Below, piece by piece: positions 20,039-57,061 of a DNA stretch of 64,000 bases (positions are counted from its first letter, which is position 1; each line of letters begins with the position of its first letter). The stretch is from positions 1,240,001-1,304,000 of the forward strand of contig NC_133623.1 in NCBI RefSeq assembly GCF_048593235.1, given 5' to 3'. Made by a program: the position numbers and the translations under genes. The notes under the pieces were generated by a model, which saw nothing but the letters and a program-made list of their open reading frames with translations, made no database searches and was not told where the DNA came from. The stretch comes from Sminthopsis crassicaudata (Eukaryota).

Positions 20039-21821
20039 ATGGAGGAGTACGCACGTGAGCCCTGGTACGCGGTAGGGTGAGGGAGAGGCAGAGACGGGGC
20101 CGACATTTGAAGCCCCGGAGGAGGGGGAGTCTGGCCTTCATCGCTAGCCCCTCCCCCCGTCGGCGGCGCCACATTTGGTCTGTCCCAGGCCTGGGCCGAG
20201 ACCTTTCCTTTAGAGGCGGAGAGGGGGAGGGCTCGCGGCTGCTCTTGGAGCTTGACCTCTCCTGCTCCCCCGTGGCTGCGTCGGACCATTCTGGAGGGGG
20301 AGAGGGAGCTGGGACCTCTCAAAGTGGGAAGGGGACGGAGGGGCCGTGGCTAGGCAGCTGGCAGGCCCGACTAGGAGGACCCCCTCCCTCCTGCCTCTGC
20401 CCCTCCCCTCCCACTGCTGGGGATGCTCCCAGAGGCCTTCAGGGATGAGAGCAAGGGGAGGGGGCCCCTTCCAGCACAACTGGGACTTCTCTCACCCCCT
20501 GTCCGAACCTCTGCAGCCCCTGGAGGATTGTGGACGACTGCGGTGGGGCCTTCACCATGGGAGTCATCGGGGGAGGTGTCTTCCAGGCTGTCAAGGGCTT
20601 CCGCAATGCCCCAGTAGTGAGTCCCCTAAGCCTGTTTCCCCTTTCCTGTGAAATGCCCATGAGTTGGGAAGGAAAGCCAAGAAATTACTCCAAAGGGCCT
20701 GTCTCCCGTGATCCCCTAGTTGTCCTCCTACCTTCTACCCCACCCACACCTAAGTTGGGGCTGGGAGGACCCTTGCCACTGTTTGGAGGGGCCCTCGGTC
20801 ACTTGCTCGTCCTCGACCTGTCTCTGTTCCCTCCCAAGGGCATCCGGCACCGCTTCCGAGGTAGTATCAATGCAGTGAGAATCCGGGCTCCCCAGATTGG
20901 AGGTAAGGGCCCCTGATGGAACAGAGCGCAGAGACCTCAGCCTGGAAATGCCAAAAGCGGGACTGCACTTGGGGACAGTTGGTCAGGCTTGGAGCACAGT
21001 GGGGGAGGCTCCGAATGCCAAGCCCACCGTCCCTCTACCACCTCAAAACTCCTCTTCCAGGTAGCTTTGCTGTCTGGGGCGGCCTGTTCTCTACCATTGA
21101 TTGCGGGCTCGTCCGACTCCGTGGGAAGGAGGACCCATGGAATTCTATCACTAGTGGGGCTCTCACTGGTGCTGTGCTGGCAGCTCGGAGTGAGTGACTT
21201 TTGAATCGGCCTCCCCCCCAACTTCCATCCCTTCTTTCTCTCTTCAGCCTCAGAACTGTGGGGAGGTGGGTAGGGCAGTAGGCCCTGAGGGAGTCGGGCC
21301 GGTCACACACTCGCTTCCTGTTGCCAGGTGGGCCCCTGGCCATGGTTGGATCAGCCATGATGGGAGGAATCCTGCTGGCCCTGATTGAAGGTGTGGGCAT
21401 CCTCCTCACCCGCTACACAGCCCAGCAGTTCCGGAACAGTGAGTCACTCTCCTGAGGCCTGCTGAGGGGGTCTCCTGCCACCCCCTTCACTCCCCCTGCT
21501 CCGCTCAGACTACCCTGCCATCTGTCTCTTAGCTTGCCATCTCCCCAAAGGGCTCCCCTTCAGCCTTCCTCCTGTATTTGTCCCAGGACCATCGCTCCTC
21601 CCTTTCTCCCGCTGGTCCTGCTTTGGGCCTTAGTCTGCTTCCTGAATTTCTCTTTTGAGCTTCAGATCGCTCCCTTTTTCTGCATCTCAGCTCTACTATT
21701 CTCTCCTCTTTTCTCTTGTCATTTTCCAGCACCCCCCTTCCTGGAAGATCCTGGACAGCTGCCCCCCAAGGAAGGTTCTGCCCCGCCCCCCAGTTACCCG
21801 GGCTACGGACAGTACCAGTGA
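20039..21821 (+). CDS. TIMM17B: Mitochondrial inner membrane translocase subunit Tim17-B, about 173 aa
   Basis: Exons 20039-20064, 20517-20616, 20839-20902, 21061-21189, 21328-21438, 21730-21821 (522 nt). [41 protein letters not shown]...[28 protein letters not shown] at 22203-22208. Confidence 0.97.
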
Positions 21822-40269: not shown

Positions 40270-43200
40270 ATGGACCAGTACAGCATCCTGGGCCGGATAG
40301 GTGAAGGGGCCCATGGCATCGTGTTCAAGGCCAAGCATGTGGAGGTAAGTGGGGACCAGGCTGATGCAGGAAGCAGGCAGCTGCCCTCGTAAAGAAATCC
40401 CTCCAGTGTGCCCCCACACCGTTCCCCCTTCTCCACTGCCCCGGCTGTCTTTGTAAGCGATCTGCCTCTTCGCCCTCACCTGCGTCCTCCGGTGCTCCTT
40501 TCCTTGCCTCCTTCACACTCCCCTTCTCCTTTCCCGTCCTTTGCTCTCTGGGCAGCGTCTCACTCTCATTCCCTCCCTTCAGTGTTTCGCGCCCCGTCTC
40601 CCACTAGGACCTCTTCCCTCCCTTCCCCTGCCCTTCCGTCGCCCCCTCTCCCTTTTGTTCCGTGGCTCCCTTTTCTCTGCGGGTCCCCTCGGCCCTCCTT
40701 CTCTCGGGGTTGGGGATTTCTGGGATCCAGCCCTCCTCCCCGTGCAGCTGACTCAGTGCCATCTCCGGCTGTCATCACTATCTTGGACAGTAGATCTGCA
40801 CCCTTTAACAGCTACTGGACAACACGCTTCTGGCTCCTGGATTCCCTCCGGGCCTCCAAAGAGCCTCTACAGGCAGAAAACGGACACTGGGGGCTTCCCA
40901 GCTCTCCCTGCCCTCGATTCTTCTGAACATCTTGCCCAACCTTGTCATGTCCACCTGATGGCATCTCTCCTTTCCCACTGCCCCCCAATGGGGCACGCGC
41001 TCGGGATCACTTCCTACCTGGACCTGCCCGCCCCCGGGCTTTCCCTCCTCCTCCAGGCCACCCTCCCTTCAGCCGGCAGAGCAGGTCTAACCAAATCGCC
41101 CTCCTGGCACACGTGGTTTCCCCTTACCTCCGGGATCAAATGTAAAACCCTCGGGCATTCCGCACCTTTCCCACAGCCCATCCCTCCTTCCTCTCAGGCC
41201 CAGGAAGGACTCAGCTTTGTCTGTCTCTGAGCCGCAGCCCAGCCTCCTCTAGGGTTGGTGCTCTGGCTCTCCCTCCTGCCTCCCTGGGGCCTTTCCTTAG
41301 CCCTCCAGGTGGCTCGCTACCCTTGAGGTGACTCCAGGCTCACTTGGTAGACATTTGCCAGCCACAAACCTAAAGAACCTAAGCTCGGAGAGGCCAGGGG
41401 TGAATCTGGTTTTATCTGAGTTGCACTGGGGGTCAGCATGATGCCACAACATGGGGTCATATGTGAAGCCCTTAGCAAATGCTTATTAAATGATCAGAGA
41501 TCTGGTTCCTTGGGATAATGGGGCTGGATCTGGAGTCATAAAGACCCATCTTGCTGAGTCCTAAATTGATCTCAGACATGTGACCCTGGCCAAGTCCCTT
41601 AACCCTGTCTGCCTCAGTTTCCTCATCTGTCAAATGAGCTGGAGAAGGAAATGGCAATCCACTGGAGAGTCTCTTCCAGGAAAACCCCCAGTGGGGTTGT
41701 GAAGATTAGAACATGACTGAAGCACAGGCACCCGGTTTCTCGGCCGTTCCGTTGCCCTACTTGCCTGCCTCAGACCCTACGTGTGGGGGTGTCTTTCTCT
41801 CCTAGACGGGGGAGACGGTGGCTCTGAAGAAGGTTGCCTTGCGACGGCTGGAGGACGGCATTCCCAACCAGGCCCTGCGGGAGATCAAGGCCCTCCAGGA
41901 GATTGAGGACAACCAGTATGTAAGTCACTTCCTCCACCTTCCTTCTGGCCCCGTTGACTCATCTGGAAACTGGGGGCTGGCCTTAGATTCATTCCAGGGC
42001 TAAGTCGGGCTCCTGGGATCACAGAACTCAAGAGAAAGCTCTTAAGTGGCTGTGAAGTGCCCTCCGACCTCAGCTTCTCGGGCCCCAAGGATGAGCCCCA
42101 AGCAGCATTGGCTCTTGGGGTTCCCTGTTCATTAGCATTAAGAGGGCAGGGGGCAGGAGAGCTTGGGTTTCATGTCTTCCTAAGTGTCCAGGAACCTGGA
42201 TCCTCATCTTGGAACCGAGTAGGAGAAACTAGCTGGGAAGGGAGGATCTCAAAGCACATTCTGGCCTGGTTTTTTATTCTGTAAAATGGCCTGGGGTGGG
42301 GGAGAGGGGTTGGCTTGAGTGTGCATTGGCCAGAGGCTCTCCTCACCTCCTCTCCTTTGCGTTGGAACCCTGGTGTCCCTTGTGTCCGTCTGGCCTCCGT
42401 CCTCAGATCTCTGAAGCTGCCCGGTACAATGGTCTTTTCGCCTGGGCCTCATTTCCCCCAATCTCCCAGAAGCCTTGGACACTGTGGATCACTCTCTCCT
42501 TGAAGATGAGATTCTTGTCCTCTTGCTCCTCTTCCTCCTCTTTCCTTCTTCCTCCTCCTCCTCCTGCCTTCTTCTTCTCTTTCTTTCCTTCTGTCTGCAT
42601 CTCTATCTTGCTCCCTCCTTCTCTCTATATCTTTCTTTCACTCTTTGCTTCTCTCTTTCCTTCTCTCAACATCTTTCTTTCTCTTTCCTTTTCTCTACAT
42701 CTGTCTCTCCTTCTTTCTCCCCTCTCTATAGTTCTCTTGCTCTCTCCTCTCTACATTTGTCTCTGTATTTCCTTCTCTTTCTTTTTCTCTACATCTTTTC
42801 TTCTCTGTACATTTCCCTTGCTCCCTCTTTCTCTCTACATCTCTCTTGCTCCTTCCTTCTCTATGTTGTTCCCTTCTCTCTACATCTCCTTCTCTCTATA
42901 TCTCTCTTGCTCTCCTCTCCACATCTCTTTCCTTCTTTCTCTTTCCTTTTCTCTACGTTTCTCTTACTCCCTTTTCTCTACATCTCTCTTGCTCCCTCCT
43001 TTACTCTACATCTCTTTTTCTTTTTCCTTTTTTCTACATCTTTCTTTTCTTCTCTTTCTCTTTCCTTCTCCCTACAGCTGTCTCTTGTTCTCTCCTCTCT
43101 CTTGTTTCCTCCTTCTCTCTACATCTCTCTTTCTTCTTCCTCTCTTTCTCTCCTCTTTGCATCTCTGTCCTTCTTTCTACAGTTCTCTCCTTCTCCCTCC

Positions 43201-46200
43201 TCTCTCCACTTCTCTCTTTCTCTTGCCTTCTCTCTACATCTCTTTTCTCCTCTCTTCCCTTCTCTCTACATCTCTATCTTGCTCTTTCCTTTTCTCCCTT
43301 GCTCCCTCCTCTCCACATCACTCTCTCTTTCTCTACAGCTTTCTTGCTCCCTCCTTTTCTCTCCATCTCTTTGCTTCTCTCTTTCCTTTTTTGTACATCT
43401 CTATCTTGCTCCCTCCTCTCTACATTTCTCTCTTTCTCTCTTTCCTTCTCTCTGCATCTCTCCCTTGTTCCCTCCTCCTCCTCCTCTCTACATCTCTCTT
43501 TCTTTTTCTCTTTCCTTCTCTCTACATCTCTATCTTGGTCCCTCCTCCTCTCTACATCTCCTTTCCCCCCCCCTTTTCTCTACATCTTTCTTTCTTCTCT
43601 TCTCTTTCTTTCTTTCTCTCTATATCTCTTTCTTCCTCTTCTCTCTTTCCTTCTCTCTACATCTCTATCTTGCTCCCTCCTCCTCTCTACATCTTTCTCT
43701 TTCCTTTTTTTTACTTTTCTCTACAGTTCTATCTCTCCTTCTCTCTGCATATCTATCTTGGTCCCTCTTTCACTCTACATCTCTCTTGCTCCCTCCTCTC
43801 TACAGCTCTTTCTTGCTCCCTCCTTCTCTTTACATCTCTCTCTTGCTCCTTCCTCCTCCCTACATCTCTCCATCTTTTTCTTTTTCCCTTTCTCTATTTC
43901 TATTTCTTTTCTTCTCTTTCTCTCTCTCTCTTTCCTTCTCTCTACAGCTCTCTGCATCTATCTTGCTCCCTCCTTCTCTCTACATTTCTGTTTCTTTCTC
44001 TCTACATCTCTCTCTTGCACCCTCCTCTCTATATCTCTTTCTCTTTCATTTCCTCTACATATCTGTTTTCTTCTCTTTCTCTTTCCTTTTCTTTACATCT
44101 CTTTTTTCTCCCCTTCCTTCTCTCTTTTTTCTCTTCTTCTCTATTTCCTTCTCTACATCTTTTTCCTTCTCTACATTTTTCTGGCCTCCTCCTCTCTATA
44201 TCTCTTTCTCTTTCCTTCTCTCTTTCATTTTCTCTACATATCTCTCTGTTTTCTTCTCTCTCTTTCCTTTTCTCTATATTTATCTTTTTTCTCTCCTTCC
44301 TTCTCTTTGTCTCTATTTCCTTCTCTCTACATCTTTTCTCTCTTTTTCCTTCTCTCTGCATGCCTCTCTTGCTCCCTCCTCTCTACTTCTCTCTCTCTTT
44401 CCTTCTCTCTCCATCTATCCCTCTTTTCTTCTTTCCTTCTCTCTACATGTTTCTCTTTCCTTCTATCATTTTCTCTGATATCTTTTCTTTCTTTTTCTCT
44501 GTATCTTTTTTCTCACCTTCCTTCTCTCTACATCTCTCTCTTTTCTTCTTTCCTTCTCTCTACATCTCTCTCTTTTCTTCTTTCCTTCTCTCTACATCTT
44601 TCTCTTTCCTTCTCTCATTTTCTCTACATTTCTATCTCTGTTTTCTTCTTTCTCTTTCCTTTTCTCTGTTTCTCTTTTTTCTCTCCTTCCTTCTCTCTCT
44701 CTATTTCCTTCTCTCTACATCTCTCTTGCTCCCTCCTACTTCTCTCTTTCTCTTTTCTTCTCTCTACATCTCTATCTCTCTTTTCTTCTTTCCTTCTATC
44801 AACATCTTTCTCTTTCCTTCTCTCATTTTCTCTACATATCTATCTCTCTTTTCTCCTTTCTCTTTCCTTCTCTCTCTTTTCTTCTATCTACATCTTTCTT
44901 TCCTTCTCTCATTTTCTCTACATANNNNNNNNNNNNNNNNNNNNNNNNNNNNNNNNNNNNNNNNNNNNNNNNNNNNNNNNNNNNNNNNNNNNNNNNNNNN
45001 NNNNNNNNNNNNNNNNNNNNNNNNNNNNNNNNNNNNNNNNNNNNNNNNNNNNNNNNNNNNNNNNNNNNNNNNNNNNATCTCTCCTTTCCTCTCTTTCTTT
45101 CTCCCTACATCTCTCTTTCTCTTTCCTTCTCTCTGCATCTCTATCTTGCTCCCTCCTTCTCTCAGTTGCTCCCTCCTCTCCACATTTCTCTCTCACTCTC
45201 ACACACACTCTCCCTGTCTCCCTCCCCCCGCCCCCGCCCTCTCTCTCTCTTGCCTTCTCTTTGTATTTCTGTTTTATGCCCTTCTTCTCTCTATGTTTCT
45301 CTCTTGCTCCCTCCTCCTCCCTACGTCTCTGTCTCTCCCCTCTCCCTCGATTCTCCTCCTATATCTCTGACTAGTTGGGCTCTCTTCACCATCTGCTACA
45401 TCTTCACCATCACCGTCACCATCACCAGTATTACTATGGTGCCGACTATGTGCCAGGCAGTGGACTAAGCACTTCCCAAATGCGATCTCACTTCCGGGAG
45501 GTGCTCTTTGTATCCTCATTGTTCAGTTGAGGAAGCTGAGGCAGACAGAGATGACGTGACTTGCCTGGCATCACGTGTGTCTGAGGCTGGAATTGAATTC
45601 AGGTCTTTTTGCCTGGGGTCACGCACTCTCTTCTCCGAGCCACCTAGCAGTCCACTAACCATGGGGGACAAGCCAAGTTGGCCTCTTGTCCAACCCTTGA
45701 TGAACTTATCGGCACTCATGGGTTCAGCACGCACCTCTTGGAGAACCATTGTCAGATGTACCTGGACAGCTCTTCCCTCTCTCCTCAGCCGTTGGCAGCC
45801 ATCACTCAGGGGTTTCTGGACGTCTCCAGCCCAGACTGACCTCATCGTCGCTCTAGGCCTCCAGGGTTCCCCGAAGCGGAATCTTCTGGTTGCCATTTAT
45901 GCCGTTTTGTGGCCTCCAGGCTTTGGGCCTTTGCCACTAAGAGCAGGAGAGGCCTTTTCTTGCCCGCCTCCTTCTCTTTCATTGCCTGCCACCTCCCCTG
46001 TATTTCTTCCTTCACATCAAGGGCAAGGACTTTGGTCTGCCTCTCTTTGCATCCCCAGCACCTGGCACACAGTAGGTCCTTAAGAAATGTTTGTTGACTG
46101 ACTGGCCACCTTTTACTTTGCTCTGGTTTCTCCCGGTCTACAAATTGAATTGATGTTTCCATGCTGGCAGTGGGTGGAGATAGACAGGGGGCAGAGAACA

Positions 46201-49200
46201 AGCATTTATTAAGAGCCTGCGAGTACCAGGTACCAGGTGCTAGGCACTGTGCTAAGCGTGTCCCAATCACGTGATCCTCCTGAGCATCCTCAGAGGTCGG
46301 ACCAGTCTCGTCCGATGGCCCTGAAGGGCCTTGCCAGCTTTACCTGGCCATTAGGTGCCTGAGGCTGGTGCTCTGCATATAGCGGGGCCCAGCTGCAGAG
46401 GGCTTCGATGCAGCCATCTGTCAATGGCTTTGCCTTAGTTGCCCTGAGAAGCTTGGTCTGTCTCCGGGCACCCGAGGAGCTCCCTTGCTTTCATCCCGTG
46501 AAGCCCGGGGCATTTGATGCCTTTGCTTCCTGGTCCGTGAGACGATTCTGCGGACGCTGAGCCATGAGCGCCCTTTGATGGAGGTCCAGACCAGCAGTCT
46601 TGAAGCACCTTCAGGCCTCGCGCTTTTCTCGAGCCTAGGAAATGAGTCCGTGCTCAGGTCTGCCTGGATGATCCGGCAACGCCTTGGGCCTCAGTTTCCC
46701 AAATATAATCAGAGAAGTCTGGTGGCAGGCGGGCTCGGGTGTAGCGATCCCTTCGGCCTTGATTTCCTGCCTTCTGTAAAACTCTCTAAGTGCCCTTATC
46801 AGGTGTCCCTGGCACCCACAGGTGGTGAAGTTGAAGGCTGTGTTCCCGCATGGAGCAGGCTTCGTCCTGGCTTTTGAGTTCATGCTCTCTGACCTGTCTG
46901 AGGTCATCCGGCATGGGAAGCGGCCTCTGGCCCCAGCTCAGGTTAAAGCGTACATGCAAATGCTGCTCAAGGGTGTAGCCTTCTGCCACGCCAACAACAT
47001 TGTACACCGGGTATGGATACCCAGAGGGCCAGTGCCCAAGCTTTTTTGGGAGGGTGCTGGGCTGGGGATGGGCAGGGCTGGGGGGGGGGGCTCAGTTGAG
47101 CCTTGGCAAGGGGACTGGATGTTGGGCCTTAGACTTCTTTCTTCCTTTTTTCCTTCCTCCTCCCTTCTTCCTTGCTTCCTCTCTTTCCTTCCTCCTCCCT
47201 CCCTCCCCCCTCCTTTCCTTTCTTTCCTTCTTCCTTCCCCAGGACCTAAAGCCGGCCAACCTGCTCCTCAGCTCCTCAGGCCAGCTGAAGATCGCCGACT
47301 TCGGTCTTGCCCGTGTTTTCTCCCATAAGGGTGACCGACTTTATAGCCACCAAGTGGCCACGAGGTACACACCTCAGCCTGGTGGGAGGGGCAAATGTGA
47401 GCGAGTGGGGGGGGGGGGCAGGGGGAGCGGCATCAGTTGCGGGCTTTGGGGTAGGAGGCATTGGTAGGCATGCTTCTTTGGCCCCATTGGGGCTGCCACC
47501 TTTCCCTCCTCTTGCCCGCTAACGGCGTTTCCTCCATCGGCTGCAGGTGGTATCGGGCTCCAGAACTTCTGTATGGAGCCAGGCAGTATGATGAGGGTGT
47601 GGACCTATGGTAAGGCTGGGGCGAGAGGGAGAGGGCCTCAAGCAGGCCCAAGCAGGGGCCCAGCCATGTCTACTCTTGCCCACAGGGCCGTGGGCTGCAT
47701 CTTCGGGGAGCTCCTGAACAACTCCCCTCTCTTCCCTGGGGAGAATGACATCGAACAGCTGTGCTGTGTCCTGCGGGTCCTTGGGACCCCCAGCCCTCAG
47801 GTGTGGCCGGTGAGTAGCAGGGAAGTGGGAGAGGGCTTCCGCCAGGTCATCGTCAAGGCCCCATAATTCCTGTGTCCCTCTGGTCCTCCCCCAGGGGATC
47901 ACCGAGCTCCCAGATTACAACAAGATCTCATTCAAGGAGCAGCTGCCCCTGCCCTTACGCGAGGTGCTGCCCGACGCGTCCTACGAAGCCCTCCAGCTCC
48001 TGAGTCTCTTTCTTGTCTACCCTCCTCGAAGTCGAATCCAGGCCAATCAGGTATCCCCCTCCCCTCTCCCAGGTGCACCTCTGTGGGCTAAGAGGAAGTG
48101 GACCCGACTCCCCCCTCCTCAAGGAGCCCCCTCCCATCTCCGGCCAGATAGTGACCGCGCCCCCAGGCCTGTCCTAGGGACACAGATGAGACAAGGCGTC
48201 AGAGAGCTGACTCCCCCTTCTCTCCCCACCCCGGCACACAACCCGCCTAGGTCAGTTGTCATGCAGTCGTTTTTCGAGCGTGTTTTGTGGCGGAGATCTC
48301 GAAGTGGTCGGCCATTTCCTTCTCCAGCTCCTTTTACAGACAAGGGTACTGAGGCAAACCGTGTGAAATGACTTGCCTAGGGTCACACAGATAGTAAGGG
48401 TCCAAGGTTGGATTTGAACTCACCACGATGAGTCTTGCAGATCCCCAGGCTGCTGTTCTAGCCGTTCTAGTGCCACCTACCAGCCCACATAGATCAATAA
48501 GTACAAAGAACTCAGGCTCCTGGCAGCTCTGAGAGAGCCTCGGTAGGGAGCAGGAGGCTGAGTTCAGGGGGCAGCCCCTGGACCTGAACGACCGGGCTAG
48601 GGGGTCTGCAGCACCCCAAAGGCCACGTCTCAGTGATACAGGCAAGCGGAAAGTACTAGAGGAAGAGAGTTCCCTGCGGAGCCGAGGCTTAACTAATCGG
48701 CCAGTGGCCGCGGCCCAAAAGAACCCAGGGGCGGGAGTTTGCACCCCACTGGCCGGGACCAGGGAGGACCGAGCCTTCTCCGCCAGGACTTTGAGATGCA
48801 CAGGGGACACCTGGGAGGAGATAGCCAGCCAATAGCTGATGGTGTGCCATCTGACTGGAGGGCCAGAGAGGCCAGGGATTTGGGAGTCACCTGTGTCCAA
48901 ATGGTCAAGAAGCTCCTACTGTGTGCGAGGCCCCACCCCACGGGAGCACCCACGCTTGGGGGGCAGCAAAGGAGAGAGAGAAGGCCACTGCCGGTCTGAT
49001 TGTGAGGGACTAAAAACGGGGTGGGGGGAGCAGCAGAGCTTGTGGCCTTTGGAGTTCGGAAATGTACGAAAAGAAAGATGGGGGGGGGCCAAGGGGGAGC
49101 CGGAAGGAGTGATTCCAGGGGACGTCCCTGGAGCACAGTGGGAGAGGAGAAAGTAGGGCAGGCTTGGCAAGGAGACGTGGAGAAACGTGGGAACTCCCCA

Positions 49201-50947
49201 AAGACGGCCTTGAGTTTTCTCAGCCAAGAAGGGAGTGAGAGAAGGGTGGGGCTGATAGCTATGGTGAAGGCCCAGTGGGGGTGGGAGAACGGATCCTTGG
49301 GGCGGTCCCCAAGGGCATGGCTGGGCCAGGGACAAGCAGAGGCCAAACAGCAGTGGGCACCAAACTCAAGAATTTGGGGCTGAAAAGAGGCACAGGAGGG
49401 GGCCCAGTGGGACAGGGCAAGGGGTGAAGGGCCTGGAGATCAGTGGGCAGGCAGGGCCTAGAGAGCCGCTGACAGGGCCACCGGAGGCCAGGGCCAGGGG
49501 AGGGCCCACAGAGCTGCCTGCGGGGCCACCCGCTGACTTATGGGAACATTGTGATTGGCTGGCATAGGATACTTTCTGTTACTACTGTTGGTATGTGAAA
49601 GGAAGCCAAGCACAACTGAGGGAGGGGGAGATAAGGAACAGAACTGTTACAGAAGGACCCCCGCCCAGCTCCAGCCCAGGGTGGGCTCCGCCCAGGCCTC
49701 CCACTCCTTCCTGTGTGACAGAGAAGGGCCTGTTCTCTCCCCCGCCACCCATGCAAGCCCAAAAAAACTCCTTTAGAAAGCTACTTTGCTGGGGAGTGAG
49801 TTGCTGGTGACGGGAAGGCGAGGCAGGGGGCCCGCTTGGCCCTCTGGAGTTAAGGAGTCCCCTTCCCCTGGCCAAGGAATACGATCCGAGGCCCCAGCAG
49901 GTTGGCACATCCCATCTGGAAAGAGGAGGTCACAGGTGCTTTGAGATCAGAAGAGGAAGAGTATGCTTCTGGCTTTAGGGTGAGGAAATAGCATCTTAGC
50001 AGAGGCTCAGAAGTGACAGACGATCCCATGAGAGACCCGAGTGGATCTGCTTTTCTACATGGGAAGGGCTCTCGGCTTTGTGGTCCGATGCCCTGGGTTC
50101 AAATCCTGCCTCTTATTAGGACCAGCTGGGTGCCCTGAGGCAAGTCCCTCAGTCTTGGAGGCCACTGGCCGCTCTAGAGGGCTGGCTCGCCTCCTTGTAC
50201 TTAAATAAGGTAACTCAGAGCCGACCACCGGAGGCTCGCCTAGCTCGGGGGCCTTAGTGGACCTGTTTTACCCAACAGCTAGGAGTGGGGTTTCGGCCGT
50301 CCTTGATTAAGGTCCCAGTTCGTGTCTGATTGGATCCCGTTTCGTGCCCTTAGGGGGTCTGCTTTAAGGAACAGATAAAAATTGCTTACTGTCCAAACGT
50401 TTGCACGTCTCCTTCACTTAAGTCAGTAGGGGGCCCGCTTTAATGGACACCTTTGAGGAACAGAGTCCCCTTGTTTCTCTTTAACTGAGCCCGGGGCTTG
50501 ATAAAAATCTGCCGGCTTGCCACAGTGCTCAAAGGGGAACTGTTTCTCCCCCCTGTCGCCACCCCCACCCCCACCCCCAGGGTTTTTTTTGTGTGTGTGT
50601 GTCGAGCGAATTCAGCCAGCCCTTTCTTTGAAGGTGGAGGAAGCGGCGCCCACTGGGGAACTCACAAGGGATGAAGCCAGGGATATAGGGGTGAGACAGG
50701 ACTGGGCCGGGCCGGGCCACCCCTTCTCACTCCCCCCACATCCCCACAGGCCCTGCTACATGAGTACTTCTTCAGAGCCCCGCTGCCAGCCCACCCCTCA
50801 GAGCTGCCCATTCCACAGCGTGGGGGGGGGCCCAGCTCCAAGGCCCGACCAGGCCCTCCTCATGTCCACGACTTCAGGGTCGAGCAGCCCCTGGCTGAGT
50901 CGTTGCCAGATCCGGAGCTGATTCGGCCCTACCTCCCAGAGGGATGA
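40270..50947 (+). CDS. CDK20: Cyclin-dependent kinase 20 (CCRK), 346 aa, 8 coding exons, intact
   Basis: Exons 40270-40344, 41806-41919, 46822-47010, 47243-47364, 47547-47609, 47686-47809, 47895-48050, 50750-50947 (1041 nt). MDQYSILGRIGEGAHGIVFKAKHVETGETVALKK, PNQALRE helix, HRDLKPAN, DFG, HQVATRWYRAPELLYGAR, C-terminal PAHPSELPIPQR...PELIRPYLPEG*. Confidence 0.96.
42520..45365. repeat. About 2.8-kb pyrimidine-rich (CT) degenerate tandem/low-complexity tract in CDK20 intron 2
   Basis: Very few G on the + strand; recurring TCTCTACATCT and CTTGCTCCCTCC motifs. Confidence 0.92.
44925..45076. other. Assembly gap (N run)
   Basis: 152 N inside the CT tract. Confidence 1.
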
Positions 50948-51000
50948 GCCTCCCACTGCCCTGGCCTCCACCCAGCTCTGCCTGGCCCCAAGAGATTGCC

Positions 51001-51021
51001 TTATCTGGGCACTCCCAGCTG
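51001..51021 (-). promoter_or_regulatory. GATA/E-box composite matching the core of the GATA1 haematopoietic enhancer (G1HE/HS1), inside the CDK20 3' UTR
   Basis: TTATCT-GGGCACTCC-CAGCTG, i.e. CAGCTG-N9-AGATAA on the minus strand. Same layout as the mouse G1HE core as I recall it (CCCTTATCTATGCCTTCCCAGCTG). Confidence 0.7.
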
Positions 51022-51140
51022 CTCCCCCTGGCCTTCCTGCGGCCAGGGTGGGAGGGGACTCAGGCGTCCGGCTTCCCTCCCTCTGGAGCTTCAGGAGAAC
51101 AGACTTCTAACCTTGGCTGTGCCTCAGTTTCCCTAATAAC

Positions 51141-51146
51141 AATAAA
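51141..51146 (+). terminator. CDK20 polyadenylation signal AATAAA
   Basis: First AATAAA, 194 nt after the CDK20 stop. Confidence 0.7.
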
Positions 51147-51478
51147 CACTACATTGGACTCCAAAGGCAGGGTCAGTGGGAATATTCAAAGTGACTGGGA
51201 AATGGGAAGAAGGCCTCAGTTTTCCCAGATGTGATTTGGGCTTGATGATTCCCACCTGTCCTGCTCTCTGCCCTTGGAGCAGGGGGACCAAAGTGCCACT
51301 ATTTGGGGGGGGGGGGAAGGGAGAGAAAGATGAATGAATTTCCCTGTCACACAGGGGCTGAAAGCAGGGGGTGAGGGGTATAGATGGGGCTAGGGAGGCC
51401 CCAGTATCCGCTCTCTTTCCCCCAACCTCCTGTGGGGCTGCTAGTTGCCTCAACCCCAACAGCCAAGGTCCGGCCCTC

Positions 51479-51497
51479 CATCTGATAAGACTTATCA
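51479..51497. promoter_or_regulatory. GATA1 upstream palindromic double-GATA element (dbGATA)
   Basis: CATCTGATAAGACTTATCA, near-identical to the mouse/human element CATCTGATAAGACTTATCT, about 600 nt upstream of the putative erythroid first exon. Confidence 0.88.
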
Positions 51498-52049
51498 GCA
51501 GGCCCCAGCCTTGGCCCAGCAGGGAGCTGGTGTAAGTTGGGGGGATGGGGGAAGGGGAAGGGTGTCCCTCATCCTCCCCAACATCTTAGTTTGAGCATCT
51601 GCCCCAGTGTGTCATAGGCCTTCTTGCCAGGACCTCATCTGACCCCCCACGCACACACTGAAAAACCTAAGGGAGAGTGGGGGTGACAGAGGGAGAAAGG
51701 GAGGTACGCATAAGCTCCAGGGCTACCATGAAATAGAGACCGGCCCGCCCCACAGGGCCTCAGAGGAGAGGAAAGAGCCGGGCCCAGCCCCAGGCCTGGA
51801 GGGCCACTGTTCCAAAGCAATGGCAACCGAGGCTCTGAGAGACCCGCACGGAAAGGTGGGGCAGAGCTCGGGCAGCAGGAGATGAGCAGGCGGAGAAGCC
51901 TATGGGCCCGTGGGGGAGGTCTGTGATGGGCGGGGGAGGAAGGTGCCCCCAGCCATCTAAGCCACACTCTGGCATTGGTGCCAGCAGGGGGCGGTCCCAA
52001 GGCTGGGCCCCTTCTCCCCCCCCACCCCCTGGCCCCGCCTGTAGCCACA

Positions 52050-52159
52050 GCAGGAGGGGGGTGTGAGGGAGGGAGACACTGTTGTCTTGGTCGCAGCCTG
52101 GACCCTGAGGAGATCCAAGAGAGACTGCCCCCCCTCCCTCGGCCTAAACACCTGCTCAG
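52050..52159 (+). promoter_or_regulatory. GATA1 erythroid promoter CACCC box and non-coding first exon (IE)
   Basis: GGGGTGTGAGG (CACCC-type) about 52057; exon ending CCTGCTCAG|GTTAGT (donor at 52160). Start site not determinable. Confidence 0.55.
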
Positions 52160-52649
52160 GTTAGTGCCCCCGAGCCCTCTAGCCACCCATTTGGGCAGGA
52201 CTTCAGCCCTGTCTCATCCTCCCAAAGCCCTAACGCTGTACCTTTGAGTTACCCCCCCCCCCCCGGCCATATTGGAGGGGCTTGAACTCCAACCTGGGTT
52301 CCTCCTCCAACTCTCCTTCCTCTCCCTTAATTCTATCTCTGGGCCTTCCGAGCTCCTCTCATCCCTCTTCTGGCTCCGGCCCTCGTCCCCTCCAGATTGC
52401 ATCCTTGAGGGGCCTGATCTGACCAATCCCCAGAGGCCCCCGAGGCCCATCTCCGATTCCGCCCTGCCTGAGGGTCCTCGGCTCTGATTTCCTCTCCAAA
52501 AATCAAGCCATATCTGACCCCCCTCCAAACCTTCCAAATTAAAAGCCATTCTGTAGGGGTGGACCATACCTGGCTGGCCTGGGCCAAGCTGGGCTGGGAG
52601 CTGGCTGCCTGGAGTCCCCCGAGCCTGCTGGGAACACACTAGCCCCAGG

Positions 52650-52702
52650 CTGCTGATAAGAGGCTTTCATATCCCCCAGTCCTGAGATAAGGGTTATCTC
52701 TG
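52650..52702. promoter_or_regulatory. GATA-site cluster in GATA1 intron 1
   Basis: TGATAA about 52655, then AGATAAGGGTTATCT (inverted pair) about 52685-52699. Confidence 0.5.
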
Positions 52703-53267
52703 CCTTGGGGTGATAACTGGGGGAGGGCTGGCTGGAGGGTACAGAAGGAGCTCCCACTCTGGGCCTGGAGGGTCGGAGAAAGGAAGATGAGAAAAGAAAA
52801 ATGGCTGGGGGGGGGGGAAGAGAGTGGGGAGGGCTGGGGAAGAAGAAGCCTCTTTCCCTGTCCACCCCCCCCTTTCTAGTCTTGGTTTCCCTGGGGCCGA
52901 GTGCCCCCACTCTTTGCCCCCCCCCCCGTTGCCCAAACATATGTGTGTATCTGTATGTGTGTTACCTGTATAATGTACATATATGATCTCGATCCCAGTG
53001 GTGTATGTGTATATTTAGAGCGTCCGTATCTCAATGTGTGTCTCCGTGTCTGTGGACGTGCACGGGCCCCGCAGGCAAACACGTCCTGTGTGTGAAGGCC
53101 AAGGCTCTGGGCCCACGGAGGCCCACTTACTCGGGGTAGGGCCTGGACCGTGGCCGGGAGAGCACCCGAGGACCGCGCTTAGGAAGGTCTCGTGGGGCTG
53201 ATGATCCTGCCCCCCCTCAGGGAGGCACCACTGACACTGCTTCTGCCGCAATCGTCGGGGAGCCCCC

Positions 53268-56200
53268 ATGGATTTCCCGCCCGGTCTGGGGGAGCCAGAG
53301 GCCCTGGCCTCTTTCGCTGAGCCTACCTTGCTGTCCCCATCGGCCTCCGTCAGCGCCACCGAAGAGCCGGGACTCTTCTTCTCGGGGCCCGAGGGGACCG
53401 ATGCCGGCGATGCCGCCACGACGCTGCCCTACTACCACCGGGGGCCAGCTGCTGATGCTTACAGACACTCACCAGGTATCCTGGGGGGGGGGGGCGGGGA
53501 GGGTTTTGAGCTTCCATCTTCTCTGTCCCTATGGTTGAAGGGTAGGACTGGTGATTGCACGAGCACTCGATGCTGTGCCTAGCACACAGTAGGTGCCATA
53601 GAAACGCTCCTTCCCTTCTCTGTCAGCAGCCAGCCCCAATCTTCCATATATGGTGTGGGGCACCCTTCCTCTTCCCCCCCGACCAGGCAAGCTTTTGTTC
53701 AATGGGCCGAGCCTGGGGGCAGTGCCAACCGAGCTAGCGGTGTGCACGGACAGCAGATCTTGGGAAGGGGGAGTCGCATTAAAGACAAATGCAGAGAAGC
53801 CCAATGCAGGTGGGCAGGATTTTTAAGGCCCGCCTCCTTAGGAATTTACATCTTTGCCTCTGGAGCAGGGAGCCGCCGGGTCAGGCCGGCAGGGAGGGCC
53901 AGAGAAAGGCCAGGGGGAGGCAGGGAGACCCACGAGAAAGCGGTAGGGGTAAGGGTCCTGAGCGAAAAGTGTTAGTGGGAGTGAACTCAAAGCGCTGGCT
54001 ATGTGGATGTGGGGAGGAAGGTCCGGATCCGCCCGGCACCTGCCTGGCTCCCAGAGGAAGGCCAGAGGAGGCAGGGTGGAGGAGGAGGCAGCACCGGGAA
54101 GCTTCCTTGGTTTTGGAGAGATGAGAGAGAGGAAAGCTTGCAGGGCAGAAGCCCCTGAGGTCTATTTTGGCCACACTGACGCCGAGGAGATGTGCAAGTG
54201 GGGAGAGACTGCCGGCATGGTACTGGAAGTATGGGGCCGGGAGAGCAGTTCTGGCTGGGGGACTGGGGGCATCTGCTCACGGGTGAACATACTCAGGAAG
54301 CGAACCTTCGGGGGTGGGGCAAGCCAGGATGGAAAAGGGTCTGGGACCAGGGCTTTTGGGGGAAGGGGGCGGGCAGGAGTTGGGGAGCGAGCAAATAAAG
54401 GAGGCTGAGAAGGACATCAGCTAGGGAGAACATCGATGAGTGAGGGCCAGGAGATAATTTCCAAAAACTGCCAAGAGATCACGAGGCCCAAGAAAGAGCA
54501 ATTAGGGTATACGGCTTGTTGAGCACAGAGAGCCAGCGTCAAGCCTTCGGGATGCCACGCACTCTTAAAAATAACTGGGGCTGTGCCAAGGACAGGTTTT
54601 GATACGGGCCCTGAGGGTACTTTCCTTCTTAGAACTGAAAATGTCTCAGAATTCTGGCAGACTCGGTTTGCCTTGTTGGATCCCCCTGAGAAGGGGCTCT
54701 GGGACCCCCAGGAACTAGAGAACTAGCGATGGCAAGCAGATGGCAGGGGCTAAGGGGTCGGAAGGGAATGGAAGCAGCAACTGTTTGGTGGGGACTTTGT
54801 GATTACTTTGTGTTTTTGTTTGTTTGTTTGTTTGTTTTTTTCAGTTAACGAGTCTTTATTTTCTCTCCCCTCCTCCCCCCCACGGGAAAAGAAAACTCCA
54901 AAAGCTTGGACACTGACCACGGGTTCTGTAGCTTCAGGTCTTGGTACCTGCCTCCCTACCGCAGCTTCTCCTCCGACATCAAAGGGGTGGTTAGAAAGCT
55001 TGGTAAAGTAGGACAGGAAAGCCTCCACCGGGGTGAGGGCTGAGGCTGGATCTCAAAGGAGGTGCTTGAGCAGAAAAGATGTCTGGAGGAGCTGCTGAAG
55101 GGAGTTGGGATCAGGGAACGGGCAGTTCGGGGCACCGGGCCAAGGCGTGTCATCGCTTAGCCACCGAGCGCTCCTCGAGGGTTGGCCGAGATCACGTGCC
55201 CCCTACGTGTCTGCCCTTTTACTGCCTTTTCCCCAGAGACTTTCCATATGCCAGGCGGTGTACGGTGTGTTGGATCTGTCTGTCCCTACTCTGACCAGCA
55301 GCCATGTTGGGAGTCAGAAATAATATTGGGGGTCGAGCTAGACCAGCAGAGGACTCCCCAGAGACAGCGAATGGGGAAAGAGCCTTGAAGTCAGGAGTCC
55401 CCTGTTTCCAGTGCTCCGGCTCCCGTCTGCTGGCGATGAGACATTAGGGACCCGGGGCCTGACCGTCACGCCCTTCCATTCCCTCTCCTTACAGTATGCC
55501 AAGTGTACCCAATTCTCAACTGGATGGATGGAGGGCTCGGGGGAGCCCCCTACGCGGCCGCAGGTTGGGCCTATGGGAAGGCAGGGCTGTACCCGGCCTC
55601 TGCCCTGGCCCCGGCTGTTCGGGAGGCCTCTCCACAGCCAGCTCCCGAGAGCCCCGATGTGAAAGGGAGCCCAAGGGGCTTCCTGGAGACCTTGAAGACA
55701 GAGCGAATGAGTCCAGACCTGCTCACCCTGGGGGTCCCAGCGGCCGTGGGGCCCTCCCACTATGTGGCAGCCAGTCCTCCTGACTTCACCACTGCTGCCT
55801 TCTTCTCACCTGCCGGAAGCCCCCTCTCAGTAGCAGGTGGAGGTAACGCCTACTCTCCGAAGCTACGTGGGGCGCTTCCCCTGTCTCCCTGTGGTGAGGA
55901 TGCAGGATCGGGTTGGGAGGGACACTCAAGGAGAGGAAAAGGGTCCAGGGGCTTAGCTGGGGTCAGCTTTCACTTTCTGTCCAATTTCTTGCCTTTCCTC
56001 CCAAGCAGAGGCCAGAGAGTGTGTGAACTGTGGAGCGACGGCTACCCCGTTGTGGCGTCGAGACGGTACCGGGCACTACCTGTGCAATGCTTGTGGCCTG
56101 TACCACAAGATGAACGGGCAGAACCGTCCCCTCATAAGGCCCAAGAAGCGCCTGGTGAGGAGGGCGGGCCTCGGGGCCAGGGAGGTGAAAAGAGGGCAGC

Positions 56201-57061
56201 CGGGCAGCAGGGACCTCACCCAGCCCCTGGGCTCTTTCCAGATTGTCAGTAAGCGAGCAGGTACCCAGTGTACCAACTGCCAGACGACTACGACGACACT
56301 GTGGCGGCGCAATGCCAGCGGGGAGCCCGTGTGTAACGCTTGTGGTCTCTACTACAAGCTGCACAATGTAAGCCCCCCGCCCCTCCCCCCAGGCCCAGGG
56401 CTTTCCTGGTTTGGGCCCATGAGAGAGGGCTCTGACCTTAGGGTTTGCCCCTTTTCCACATCGAGGATGATTCCCAAGCCCCTTTTGAAGCCTGCTGTAT
56501 TTGATGGGTGACACGAGGACACTGGGGCTGGGGCCTGGGTGACTTGGCAGGGAGGGCTGGGCCAGGGAATCTCCGAGACCTAGACCCTTCCTCCTGGATG
56601 GCTGAGCTGGGAGGAGGGGAACTGGGTGAGAAAACCCAGTTTCTGGGGTGTTAGGGTTTATTCTCCCTAGGACCCTTATACTGGGGATGTCTCTTTTCGG
56701 GGTACCAGAGCCCCTGGGTTTGTCTCGCCCCCAGGTGAACCGGCCGCTGACTATGCGCAAAGATGGCATCCAGACTCGGAACCGCAAAGTGTCGGGCAAA
56801 GCTAAGAAGAAGGCCCGGGTGGGCCAGGCCCTGATGGCTGCCGGGCAGGGGACAGCAGCAGCGGCTGCTGTGGCTGCGGCCGGCCCAGGAGACCTGGCCA
56901 CTGAACCGCTCTACCCGAGCCTCGGGCCTGTGGTGCTCTCGGGCCACATGGCCTCAGTGGGGCACCTGGTCCCCTTTCCCGGGTCTGCCGCCCCCCTGCT
57001 CGGGGGCACGGGCGCCCCCTTTTCCGGGGCCACGGGGGTGGTCTCGGCCCTGGGCTCGTGA
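53268..57061 (+). CDS. GATA1: Erythroid transcription factor GATA-1, about 401 aa
   Basis: Exons 53268-53475, 55495-55893, 56009-56154, 56242-56367, 56735-57061 (1206 nt). MDFPGLG-like start, N-finger [50 protein letters not shown]-finger [42 protein letters not shown] 57208-57213. Confidence 0.97.

What the first reader, a model, noticed from the sequence alone, without database searches (positions are those of the whole stretch)
50948..51165. GATA1 haematopoietic enhancer core appears embedded in the CDK20 3' UTR
Seen: TTATCT-N9-CAGCTG at 51001-51021, 54 nt after the CDK20 stop and 120 nt before its AATAAA. The conserved dbGATA lies about 460 nt further on and the putative IE exon about 1.1 kb on. 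Established: the mouse G1HE/HS1, about 3.5-3.9 kb upstream, has a GATA site and E-box bound by the GATA1-TAL1-LMO2-LDB1 complex and is needed for erythroid/megakaryocytic Gata1 expression. Inference: this is dual-use DNA, an mRNA 3' UTR that is also the GATA1 enhancer. The eutherian enhancer could be the retained remnant of an ancestral CDK20 3' end after the gene moved away, and CDK20 transcription may interfere with or be boosted by it.
Basis: partly seen in the sequence, partly recalled or inferred. Interest (0 to 1): 0.85.

Follow-up and report, generated by a model that had tools for sequence, protein, structure and literature searches.

The report
GATA1 enhancer core inside CDK20 3' UTR
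In this marsupial (fat-tailed dunnart) the sequence that matches the upstream blood-cell enhancer of GATA1 in placental mammals starts two bases after the stop codon of the neighbouring gene CDK20, so the same DNA is predicted to be both an mRNA tail and an enhancer, and a turtle shows that this gene neighbourhood is the ancestral one.

Summary
TTATCT-N9-CAGCTG sits at 51001-51021, 54 nt after the CDK20 stop codon and 120 nt before the only canonical AATAAA.

It is not a chance motif. Hamster and dog carry the same composite, with the same 9-nt spacing and orientation, about 6.8-7.0 kb 5' of the GATA1 ATG. That places it 2.5-2.8 kb 5' of the double GATA site, where the mouse G1HE/HS1 enhancer is reported.

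A block of about 100-140 nt (50949-51087) aligns significantly to both eutherians. It is collinear with two further conserved blocks, the double-GATA promoter block and the intron-1 GATA cluster. The block begins 2 nt after the CDK20 stop. Between two dasyurid species it is better conserved than the CDK20 coding exon.

A kinase gene lies directly 5' of GATA1 in five marsupials, and it was shown to be CDK20 in dunnart and Antechinus. A softshell turtle has TIMM17B-CDK20-(18 kb)-GATA1-HDAC6, so this order is ancestral and eutherians lost CDK20 from the site.

I found no fossil CDK20 exon in the eutherian flanks and no alignable enhancer core in reptiles. The idea that the enhancer is a remnant of the 3' end is therefore only partly supported; marsupial compaction fits at least as well.

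Enhancer activity and 3' end usage remain untested.

The parts
20514..21788 (+). TIMM17B exons, which mark the conserved upstream neighbour of CDK20
   Evidence: tblastx of the turtle Tim17 gene (L008:1034-4583) gives 93-95% amino-acid identity in the main exons
40270..50947 (+). CDK20 coding region: 8 exons, intact, with stop TGA at 50945-50947
   Evidence: Open frames. tblastn of dog CDK20 P0134, Antechinus P0125 and opossum P0163 covers all exons.
50750..50947 (+). Coding part of CDK20 exon 8. It ends ...PEG-stop, as in dog and opossum.
50948..51165 (+). Predicted CDK20 3' UTR
   Evidence: The stop is at 50945-47. No AATAAA or ATTAAA occurs before 51141. The signal is conserved in Antechinus, 194 nt after its stop. 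No transcript data were available.
50949..51087 (.). Conserved block orthologous to the eutherian GATA1 upstream enhancer core (G1HE/HS1 position)
   Evidence: blastn 50949-51045 to hamster L002:3109-3207 (72%, E 1.6e-11) and 50980-51045 to dog L003:2963-3029. The nhmmer profile spans 50950-51087. Smith-Waterman z is 14.2 and 10.4. Identity to Antechinus is 99.3%.
51001..51006 (-). GATA site (AGATAA on the minus strand)
   Evidence: Invariant in dunnart, Antechinus, hamster and dog
51016..51021 (.). E-box CAGCTG, 9 nt from the GATA site
   Evidence: Invariant, with invariant spacing, in all four mammals
51141..51146 (+). AATAAA poly(A) signal of CDK20
   Evidence: Conserved in Antechinus and absent at the aligned place in hamster and dog.
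51419..51578 (.). Conserved block with the palindromic double GATA site (51483-51497)
   Evidence: blastn to hamster 5598-5701 and dog 5747-5855. A weaker match exists in turtle, where the palindrome is GATAAGGGCTTATC.
52080..52160 (+). Putative haematopoietic first exon (IE) of GATA1. The 5' limit is uncertain; the donor GT is at 52161.
   Evidence: Consensus donor read. It lies 670 nt from the palindrome, against 671-691 in mouse. Identity to Antechinus is 100%. It does not align significantly to hamster or dog.
52647..52846 (.). Conserved block holding the intron-1 GATA cluster
   Evidence: blastn to hamster 7568-7766 (E 1e-16) and dog 7751-7839 (E 8e-16)
53268..57058 (+). GATA1 coding region (5 coding exons, two GATA zinc fingers)

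Best explanation
The first ~140 nt of the dunnart CDK20 3' UTR are the marsupial orthologue of the core of the therian GATA1 haematopoietic enhancer (mouse G1HE / HS1 / HS-3.5). The core keeps the composite GATA site plus E-box at identical spacing and orientation.

By analogy with mouse (inferred, not shown here), it should be bound in blood progenitors by GATA2 or GATA1 together with the TAL1/E2A-LMO2-LDB1 complex. It should activate the GATA1 IE promoter, which here lies only about 1.1 kb downstream instead of 3-3.7 kb.

The overlap exists because TIMM17B-CDK20-GATA1-HDAC6 is the ancestral amniote gene order. In marsupials the CDK20-GATA1 spacer has shrunk from about 18 kb in the turtle to about 1.2 kb. 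The shrinkage removed everything between two constrained elements, the CDK20 stop codon and the enhancer core, so CDK20 now polyadenylates at a signal 3' of the core (inferred). Eutherians kept the enhancer but lost CDK20 from this site.

Shown: the motif, the homology, the collinearity, the gene order, and the position between the stop and the first poly(A) signal. Inferred: enhancer activity in marsupials, actual 3' end usage, and the direction of the evolutionary change.
For: Motif and coordinates.

The same TTATCT-N9-CAGCTG occurs once in the 10 kb 5' of GATA1 in Antechinus, hamster and dog.

Three collinear conserved blocks link dunnart to both eutherians, and the whole-window search finds no other specific match of the eutherian element.

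Core-to-core local alignment gives z 14.2 and 10.4 against shuffles, while exon 8 against the eutherian 5' flank gives z about 0. The nhmmer profile gives E 2.6e-31 at 50950-51087.

Between dunnart and Antechinus the core is 99.3% identical, against 97.5% for the coding exon and 81-93% for background.

The eutherian element lies 2.5-2.8 kb 5' of the double GATA site. That site is 0.67-0.69 kb 5' of the IE exon end in mouse, which puts the element about 3.2-3.5 kb from the IE exon end. This fits the published -3.5/-3.7 kb position.

A kinase gene lies directly 5' of GATA1 in Antechinus, opossum, tammar and wombat, and none lies within 10 kb in hamster, dog or a lizard.

The turtle CDK20 poly(A) signal lies 147-362 nt after the stop.
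Against: There are no chromatin, binding, reporter or transcript data for any marsupial here.

The mouse G1HE sequence itself could not be obtained, so identity of the hamster/dog element with the experimentally defined enhancer rests on position and on the GATA/E-box content, which I recalled from Vyas et al. 1999.

The E-box to GATA spacing (CTG-N9-AGATAA) is 1 nt longer than the spacing I recall as commonest genome-wide.

Hamster and dog share at least 400 nt of conservation 5' of the core that has no counterpart in the dunnart. The marsupial element is therefore a truncated version and might work differently.

DNA was available for only two closely related marsupials.
Confidence: 0.78

Rival explanations
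1. The overlap is ancestral. Already in the therian ancestor the enhancer core formed the start of the CDK20 3' UTR. The eutherian G1HE is what was left when CDK20 was removed by a break right at its stop codon.
For: Homology to hamster starts 2 nt after the stop codon. The stop position (...PEG-stop) is shared by eutherian and marsupial CDK20. CDK20-GATA1 adjacency is ancestral. The eutherian sequence 5' of the core has no match in dunnart or turtle, as expected if it came from the other side of a breakpoint.
Against: There is no fossil exon 8 or poly(A) signal in eutherian flanks, although about 160 My of decay would erase them. In the turtle the CDK20 3' end and the GATA1 upstream elements are about 10 kb apart, and no core is alignable. 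A deletion bounded by two constrained elements explains the exact abutment equally well.
Confidence: 0.3
2. The block is conserved in marsupials for a post-transcriptional role in the CDK20 mRNA, and the working GATA1 enhancer of marsupials lies elsewhere.
For: It lies in a predicted 3' UTR and is 99% conserved between two dasyurids.
Against: The same block, with its transcription-factor motifs invariant, is conserved in eutherians, where no CDK20 transcript exists nearby. No other match to the eutherian element exists in the window.
Confidence: 0.06
3. The element is not in the mature CDK20 mRNA, because CDK20 transcripts end at an unrecognised non-canonical signal within the first 53 nt after the stop.
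For: No transcript evidence was available.
Against: No AATAAA, ATTAAA or common variant signal occurs before 51141. A 3' UTR shorter than 53 nt would be unusual. AATAAA at 51141 is conserved in Antechinus.
Confidence: 0.05
4. A chance motif with no homology to the enhancer.
For: Loose GATA-CAG composites are not rare in the window (6 found, 3 expected).
Against: The exact composite has 0 expected. It is orthologous, collinear and significantly aligned in four mammals.
Confidence: 0.01

Closest known systems
Mouse/human GATA1 haematopoietic enhancer (G1HE, HS1, HS-3.5)
   Same: It lies 5' of the IE promoter and of the palindromic double GATA site, in the same orientation. It has the same GATA site plus CAGCTG E-box at the same spacing as the element at that position in hamster and dog. 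About 100-140 nt of significant sequence homology are shared.
   Different: It lies 0.48 kb from the double GATA site instead of 2.5-2.8 kb. It lacks the 400 nt or more of eutherian-conserved sequence 5' of the core. It sits inside the predicted 3' UTR of an expressed neighbour. Its activity is untested.
Exonic enhancers / dual-function exons (Birnbaum et al. 2012, PMC3371700; Nat Commun 2026, PMC13216554)
   Same: DNA that is part of a mature mRNA of one gene and is also a candidate enhancer of a nearby gene.
   Different: The described cases are mostly coding exons. Here the DNA is a 3' UTR, and the same orthologous enhancer is plainly intergenic in another mammalian clade, which gives a natural with/without comparison.
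Alpha-globin enhancers inside the NPRL3 gene (recalled from my own knowledge)
   Same: An erythroid enhancer embedded in the transcription unit of an unrelated, broadly expressed upstream neighbour on the same strand, within anciently conserved synteny.
   Different: Those elements are intronic and tens of kb away. This one is exonic and about 1 kb from its target promoter.

Membership tests
GATA1 upstream haematopoietic enhancer (G1HE/HS1) orthologue | Lies 5' of the GATA1 IE promoter and is collinear with the double GATA site and the intron-1 GATA cluster | tested here: met
   Three collinear blocks link dunnart to hamster and dog
GATA1 upstream haematopoietic enhancer (G1HE/HS1) orthologue | Significant sequence homology to the eutherian element | tested here: met
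   blastn E 1.6e-11 and 8.6e-7; z 14.2 and 10.4; nhmmer E 2.6e-31
GATA1 upstream haematopoietic enhancer (G1HE/HS1) orthologue | An essential GATA site with an adjacent E-box | tested here: met
   TTATCT-N9-CAGCTG is invariant in four mammals
GATA1 upstream haematopoietic enhancer (G1HE/HS1) orthologue | The eutherian comparator is the experimentally defined mouse element at -3.5/-3.7 kb | tested here: inconclusive
   The mouse sequence and the primary papers were not obtainable. The position in hamster and dog, 2.5-2.8 kb 5' of the double GATA site, fits the reviews.
GATA1 upstream haematopoietic enhancer (G1HE/HS1) orthologue | Erythroid/megakaryocytic hypersensitive site with enhancer activity, bound by GATA and TAL1 complexes | not testable with these tools
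   Needs chromatin and reporter experiments in marsupial cells
Exonic (dual-use) enhancer | The sequence is part of a mature mRNA exon of another gene | tested here: inconclusive
   The sequence places it between the CDK20 stop and the first canonical poly(A) signal. No transcript data were available.
Canonical E-box/GATA composite (CTG-N7-8-WGATAA, recalled from memory) | A spacing of 7-8 nt between CTG and WGATAA | tested here: not met
   The spacing here is CTG-N9-AGATAA. The same spacing is kept in hamster and dog, so it is the native spacing of this enhancer.
CDK20 (CCRK) orthologue | A full-length kinase with the CDK20-specific C-terminal exon, intron-containing | tested here: met
   The last exon finds only CDK20-type proteins. 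All 8 exons match dog, Antechinus and opossum CDK20.

The most novel reading that the evidence does not exclude
The eutherian G1HE marks the spot where the CDK20 3' end once stood. In marsupials, read-through of the broadly expressed CDK20 transcription unit across the enhancer and towards the GATA1 promoter (poly(A) signal about 340 nt from the double GATA site and about 0.9 kb from the IE exon) is part of GATA1 control. For example, it could keep the enhancer in transcribed, methylated gene-body chromatin outside the blood lineages. In mouse that job has been assigned to sequences 5' of G1HE (recalled from memory: Takai et al. 2013).
Probability: 0.15. Interest if true: 0.8.

Novelty: new variant of a known kind. 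Interest (0 to 1): 0.6.

Why it matters
G1HE/HS1 is one of the best-studied lineage enhancers, and its deletion gives the Gata1-low mouse. Four points follow from this finding.

- The enhancer core is about 160 million years old, because marsupials and eutherians share it.
- In one mammalian clade the core is transcribed as part of a neighbour's mRNA, and in the other it is intergenic. This is a natural experiment on whether transcription through an enhancer, and a poly(A) site 0.3-1 kb from a target promoter, matter.
- The comparison defines a minimal therian core of about 140 nt against a longer eutherian element.
- The turtle comparison settles the polarity of the rearrangement: the marsupial order TIMM17B-CDK20-GATA1-HDAC6 is ancestral, and eutherians moved CDK20 off what became the X chromosome.

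I found no paper that links CDK20 and GATA1 in this way.

Tried and rejected
- Fossil CDK20 exon in eutherian flanks. I ran tblastn with the exon-8 peptide and with full dog CDK20, and local DNA alignment against shuffles. Nothing was found.
- A z of 4.8 between dunnart intron 7 and the dog 5' flank is a CACCC low-complexity match and was discounted.
- Enhancer core in reptiles. blastn and an nhmmer profile against the stitched turtle CDK20-GATA1 spacer, the Chrysemys and gecko CDK20 3' flanks and the lizard GATA1 5' flank gave no significant hit (best E 0.5). A turtle TTATCT-N11-CATATG about 4.9 kb 3' of the CDK20 stop has no flank homology.
- IE exon alignment to hamster and dog was not significant.
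- Primary papers on G1HE (PMC85182, PMC2643832, PMC2045135) are not held. Details of the mouse core therefore rest on reviews and on my memory.
- DNA of opossum, tammar and wombat was not delivered. Turtle isoform P0019 was not on record.
- blastn hits between the eutherian flanks and 42.5-45.3 kb are CT-rich low complexity.

Full report
WHAT THE WINDOW IS. The window comes from the fat-tailed dunnart, Sminthopsis crassicaudata. The open frame holding GATA1 exon 3 is 100% identical to that species' erythroid transcription factor.

Three genes on the + strand matter here.
- TIMM17B: exons at 20514-21788.
- CDK20: intact, eight exons, 40270-50947. Its exons match named CDK20 proteins of dog, Antechinus and opossum.
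- GATA1: ATG at 53268, two zinc-finger exons near 56.0-56.4 kb, stop at 57058.

By the Antechinus annotation, HDAC6 follows GATA1.

THE OBSERVATION. Every coordinate in the finding holds.
- The CDK20 stop TGA is at 50945-50947.
- TTATCT-N9-CAGCTG is at 51001-51021. It is unique in the window, with none in 100 shuffles.
- The only canonical poly(A) signal after the stop is AATAAA at 51141-51146.
- The palindromic double GATA site is at 51483-51497.
- A consensus splice donor at 52160/52161 lies 670 nt from the palindrome. In mouse the palindrome is 671-691 nt from the end of exon IE (PMC2193547).

A looser GATA-CAG composite is not rare (6 found, 3 expected). The motif alone would therefore prove little.

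IS IT THE ENHANCER? I fetched the GATA1 loci, with 10 kb of 5' flank, of Antechinus (L001), golden hamster (L002) and dog (L003).

In each flank the pattern TTATCW-N6-11-CANNTG occurs exactly once in this orientation, and each time it is TTATCT-N9-CAGCTG. It lies 6840 nt (hamster) and 7018 nt (dog) 5' of the ATG.

Sensitive blastn of dunnart 49500-53400 against the eutherian flanks gives three blocks, in the same order in both species.
- 50949-51045, the block with the composite: 72% over 99 nt, E 1.6e-11 to hamster; 75%, E 8.6e-7 to dog.
- 51419-51578, the double GATA block.
- 52647-52846, the intron-1 GATA cluster.

Further tests agree.
- Local alignment of core against core scores 14 and 10 standard deviations above dinucleotide shuffles.
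- A profile of the four-mammal alignment (A1) spans 50950-51087.
- Searching the whole 64 kb with the eutherian flanks finds no other specific match, only CT-rich low complexity in CDK20 intron 2.
- In hamster and dog the element is 2.5-2.8 kb 5' of the double GATA site. That puts it about 3.2-3.5 kb from the end of exon IE, where reviews place G1HE/HS-3.5.
- Between dunnart and Antechinus the core has 1 difference in 137 nt (99.3%). CDK20 exon 8 is 97.5% identical, and neighbouring intron and spacer are 81-93%.

I conclude that the block is the marsupial orthologue of the eutherian upstream enhancer core. That the mouse element binds the GATA1-TAL1-LMO2-LDB1 complex through this GATA/E-box is my recollection of Vyas et al. 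1999. The primary papers were not available.

IS IT IN THE 3' UTR? Homology to hamster starts 2 nt after the CDK20 stop codon. There is no AATAAA, ATTAAA or common variant signal before 51141. That AATAAA is conserved in Antechinus and absent at the aligned place in hamster and dog. The stop position (...PEG-stop) is the same in dog, opossum and dasyurids. By sequence, any normally processed CDK20 mRNA contains the enhancer core. No transcript data could be consulted, so this step is inferred.

HOW DID IT ARISE? A kinase gene of 346-383 residues lies directly 5' of GATA1, on the same strand, in Antechinus, opossum, tammar and wombat. The adjacency therefore spans American and Australian marsupials. 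Hamster, dog and a lizard have no gene within 10 kb 5' of GATA1.

In the softshell turtle Pelodiscus one contig carries TIMM17B(+), CDK20(+), 18.3 kb without a called gene, GATA1(+) and HDAC6(+) (the two loci overlap and were stitched). Chrysemys also has TIMM17B followed by CDK20. The dunnart order is thus the ancestral amniote order, and eutherians lost CDK20 from this place. This settles the polarity of the rearrangement noted earlier by the scan (s1-173113).

In the turtle the CDK20 poly(A) signal is 147 nt after the stop. The double GATA palindrome lies about 9.8 kb further on. No sequence alignable to the enhancer core is found in the turtle, lizard or gecko flanks.

Eutherian flanks hold no trace of CDK20 exon 8. 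Hamster and dog share at least 400 nt of strong conservation 5' of the core that the dunnart lacks.

Two histories fit these facts.
- Marsupial deletions removed everything between two constrained elements, the stop codon and the core. CDK20 then took a poly(A) signal beyond the core. I favour this one, at roughly 0.5.
- The core already abutted the stop in the therian ancestor, and the eutherian break fell there.

Monotreme loci and the eutherian CDK20 3' flank would decide between them.

HOW IT MOST LIKELY WORKS. As DNA, the core is expected to act as in mouse. GATA2, and later GATA1, together with the TAL1/E2A-LMO2-LDB1 bridge, occupy the GATA/E-box composite in progenitors and drive the IE promoter, here only about 1.1 kb away (inferred). 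As RNA, the same bases are the start of the CDK20 3' UTR.

CDK20 polymerases must cross the enhancer and terminate within a few hundred nt of the double GATA site. Interference with, or priming of, the GATA1 promoter is therefore possible but wholly untested.

COMPARISON WITH KNOWN THINGS, AND NOVELTY. The enhancer is a known element. Enhancers inside exons of neighbouring genes are a known class (PMC3371700, PMC13216554).

What is new is the combination. A classic lineage enhancer is exonic (3' UTR) in one mammalian clade and intergenic in the other, and the ancestral CDK20-GATA1 linkage explains why. A full-text search found no paper that connects CDK20 with GATA1 regulation or with marsupial synteny. 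I rate it a new variant of a known kind, of moderate to good interest.

LIMITS.
- Only two eutherians and two closely related marsupials could be aligned.
- The mouse sequence and the primary literature were unavailable.
- No expression or chromatin data were available.

Noticed in passing
window 42200-45400: CDK20 intron 2 holds a CT-rich low-complexity tract of about 3 kb with an assembly gap (N 44925-45076). It gives extreme GC and AT skew and spurious blastn hits to CT-rich tracts in eutherian GATA1 flanks.
   Followed up: partly
opossum locus (no DNA): In Monodelphis the annotated upstream kinase CDS (383 aa) ends only 1120 nt before the GATA1 ATG. In Antechinus, tammar and wombat the distance is 2.26-2.45 kb. 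Either the spacing is even tighter or an isoform has a 3' exon inside the GATA1 5' region.
   Followed up: no
L002:2700-3108 and L003:2550-2962: Hamster and dog share strong conservation for at least 400 nt 5' of the shared enhancer core (local score 95, shuffles about 11). This stretch has no counterpart in the dunnart, where CDK20 exon 8 abuts the core.
   Followed up: partly
window 51122-51271: The 150 nt around and after the CDK20 poly(A) signal are 99% identical between dunnart and Antechinus, as conserved as the enhancer core. They could be the 3' part of the enhancer or poly(A) downstream elements.
   Followed up: no
window 51036-51045; L002:3192-3207: Hamster and dog have a direct-repeat-like TGAACTGTGGCCA / TGAACTGTCGCCA just 3' of the E-box, a candidate nuclear-receptor site. 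The dunnart keeps only the second half (…CTGCGGCCA).
   Followed up: no
window 9671-11304: PIM-type kinase exons on the + strand, upstream of TIMM17B.
   Followed up: no
L005:19311-21788: The 315-aa gene annotated 3' of Chrysemys CDK20, on the minus strand, is a proline-rich tandem repeat in all frames and is probably a spurious gene model.
   Followed up: partly
window 55957-56508: The intron between the two GATA1 zinc-finger exons is open in frame, which gives a 184-codon stop-free frame across both fingers.
   Followed up: no
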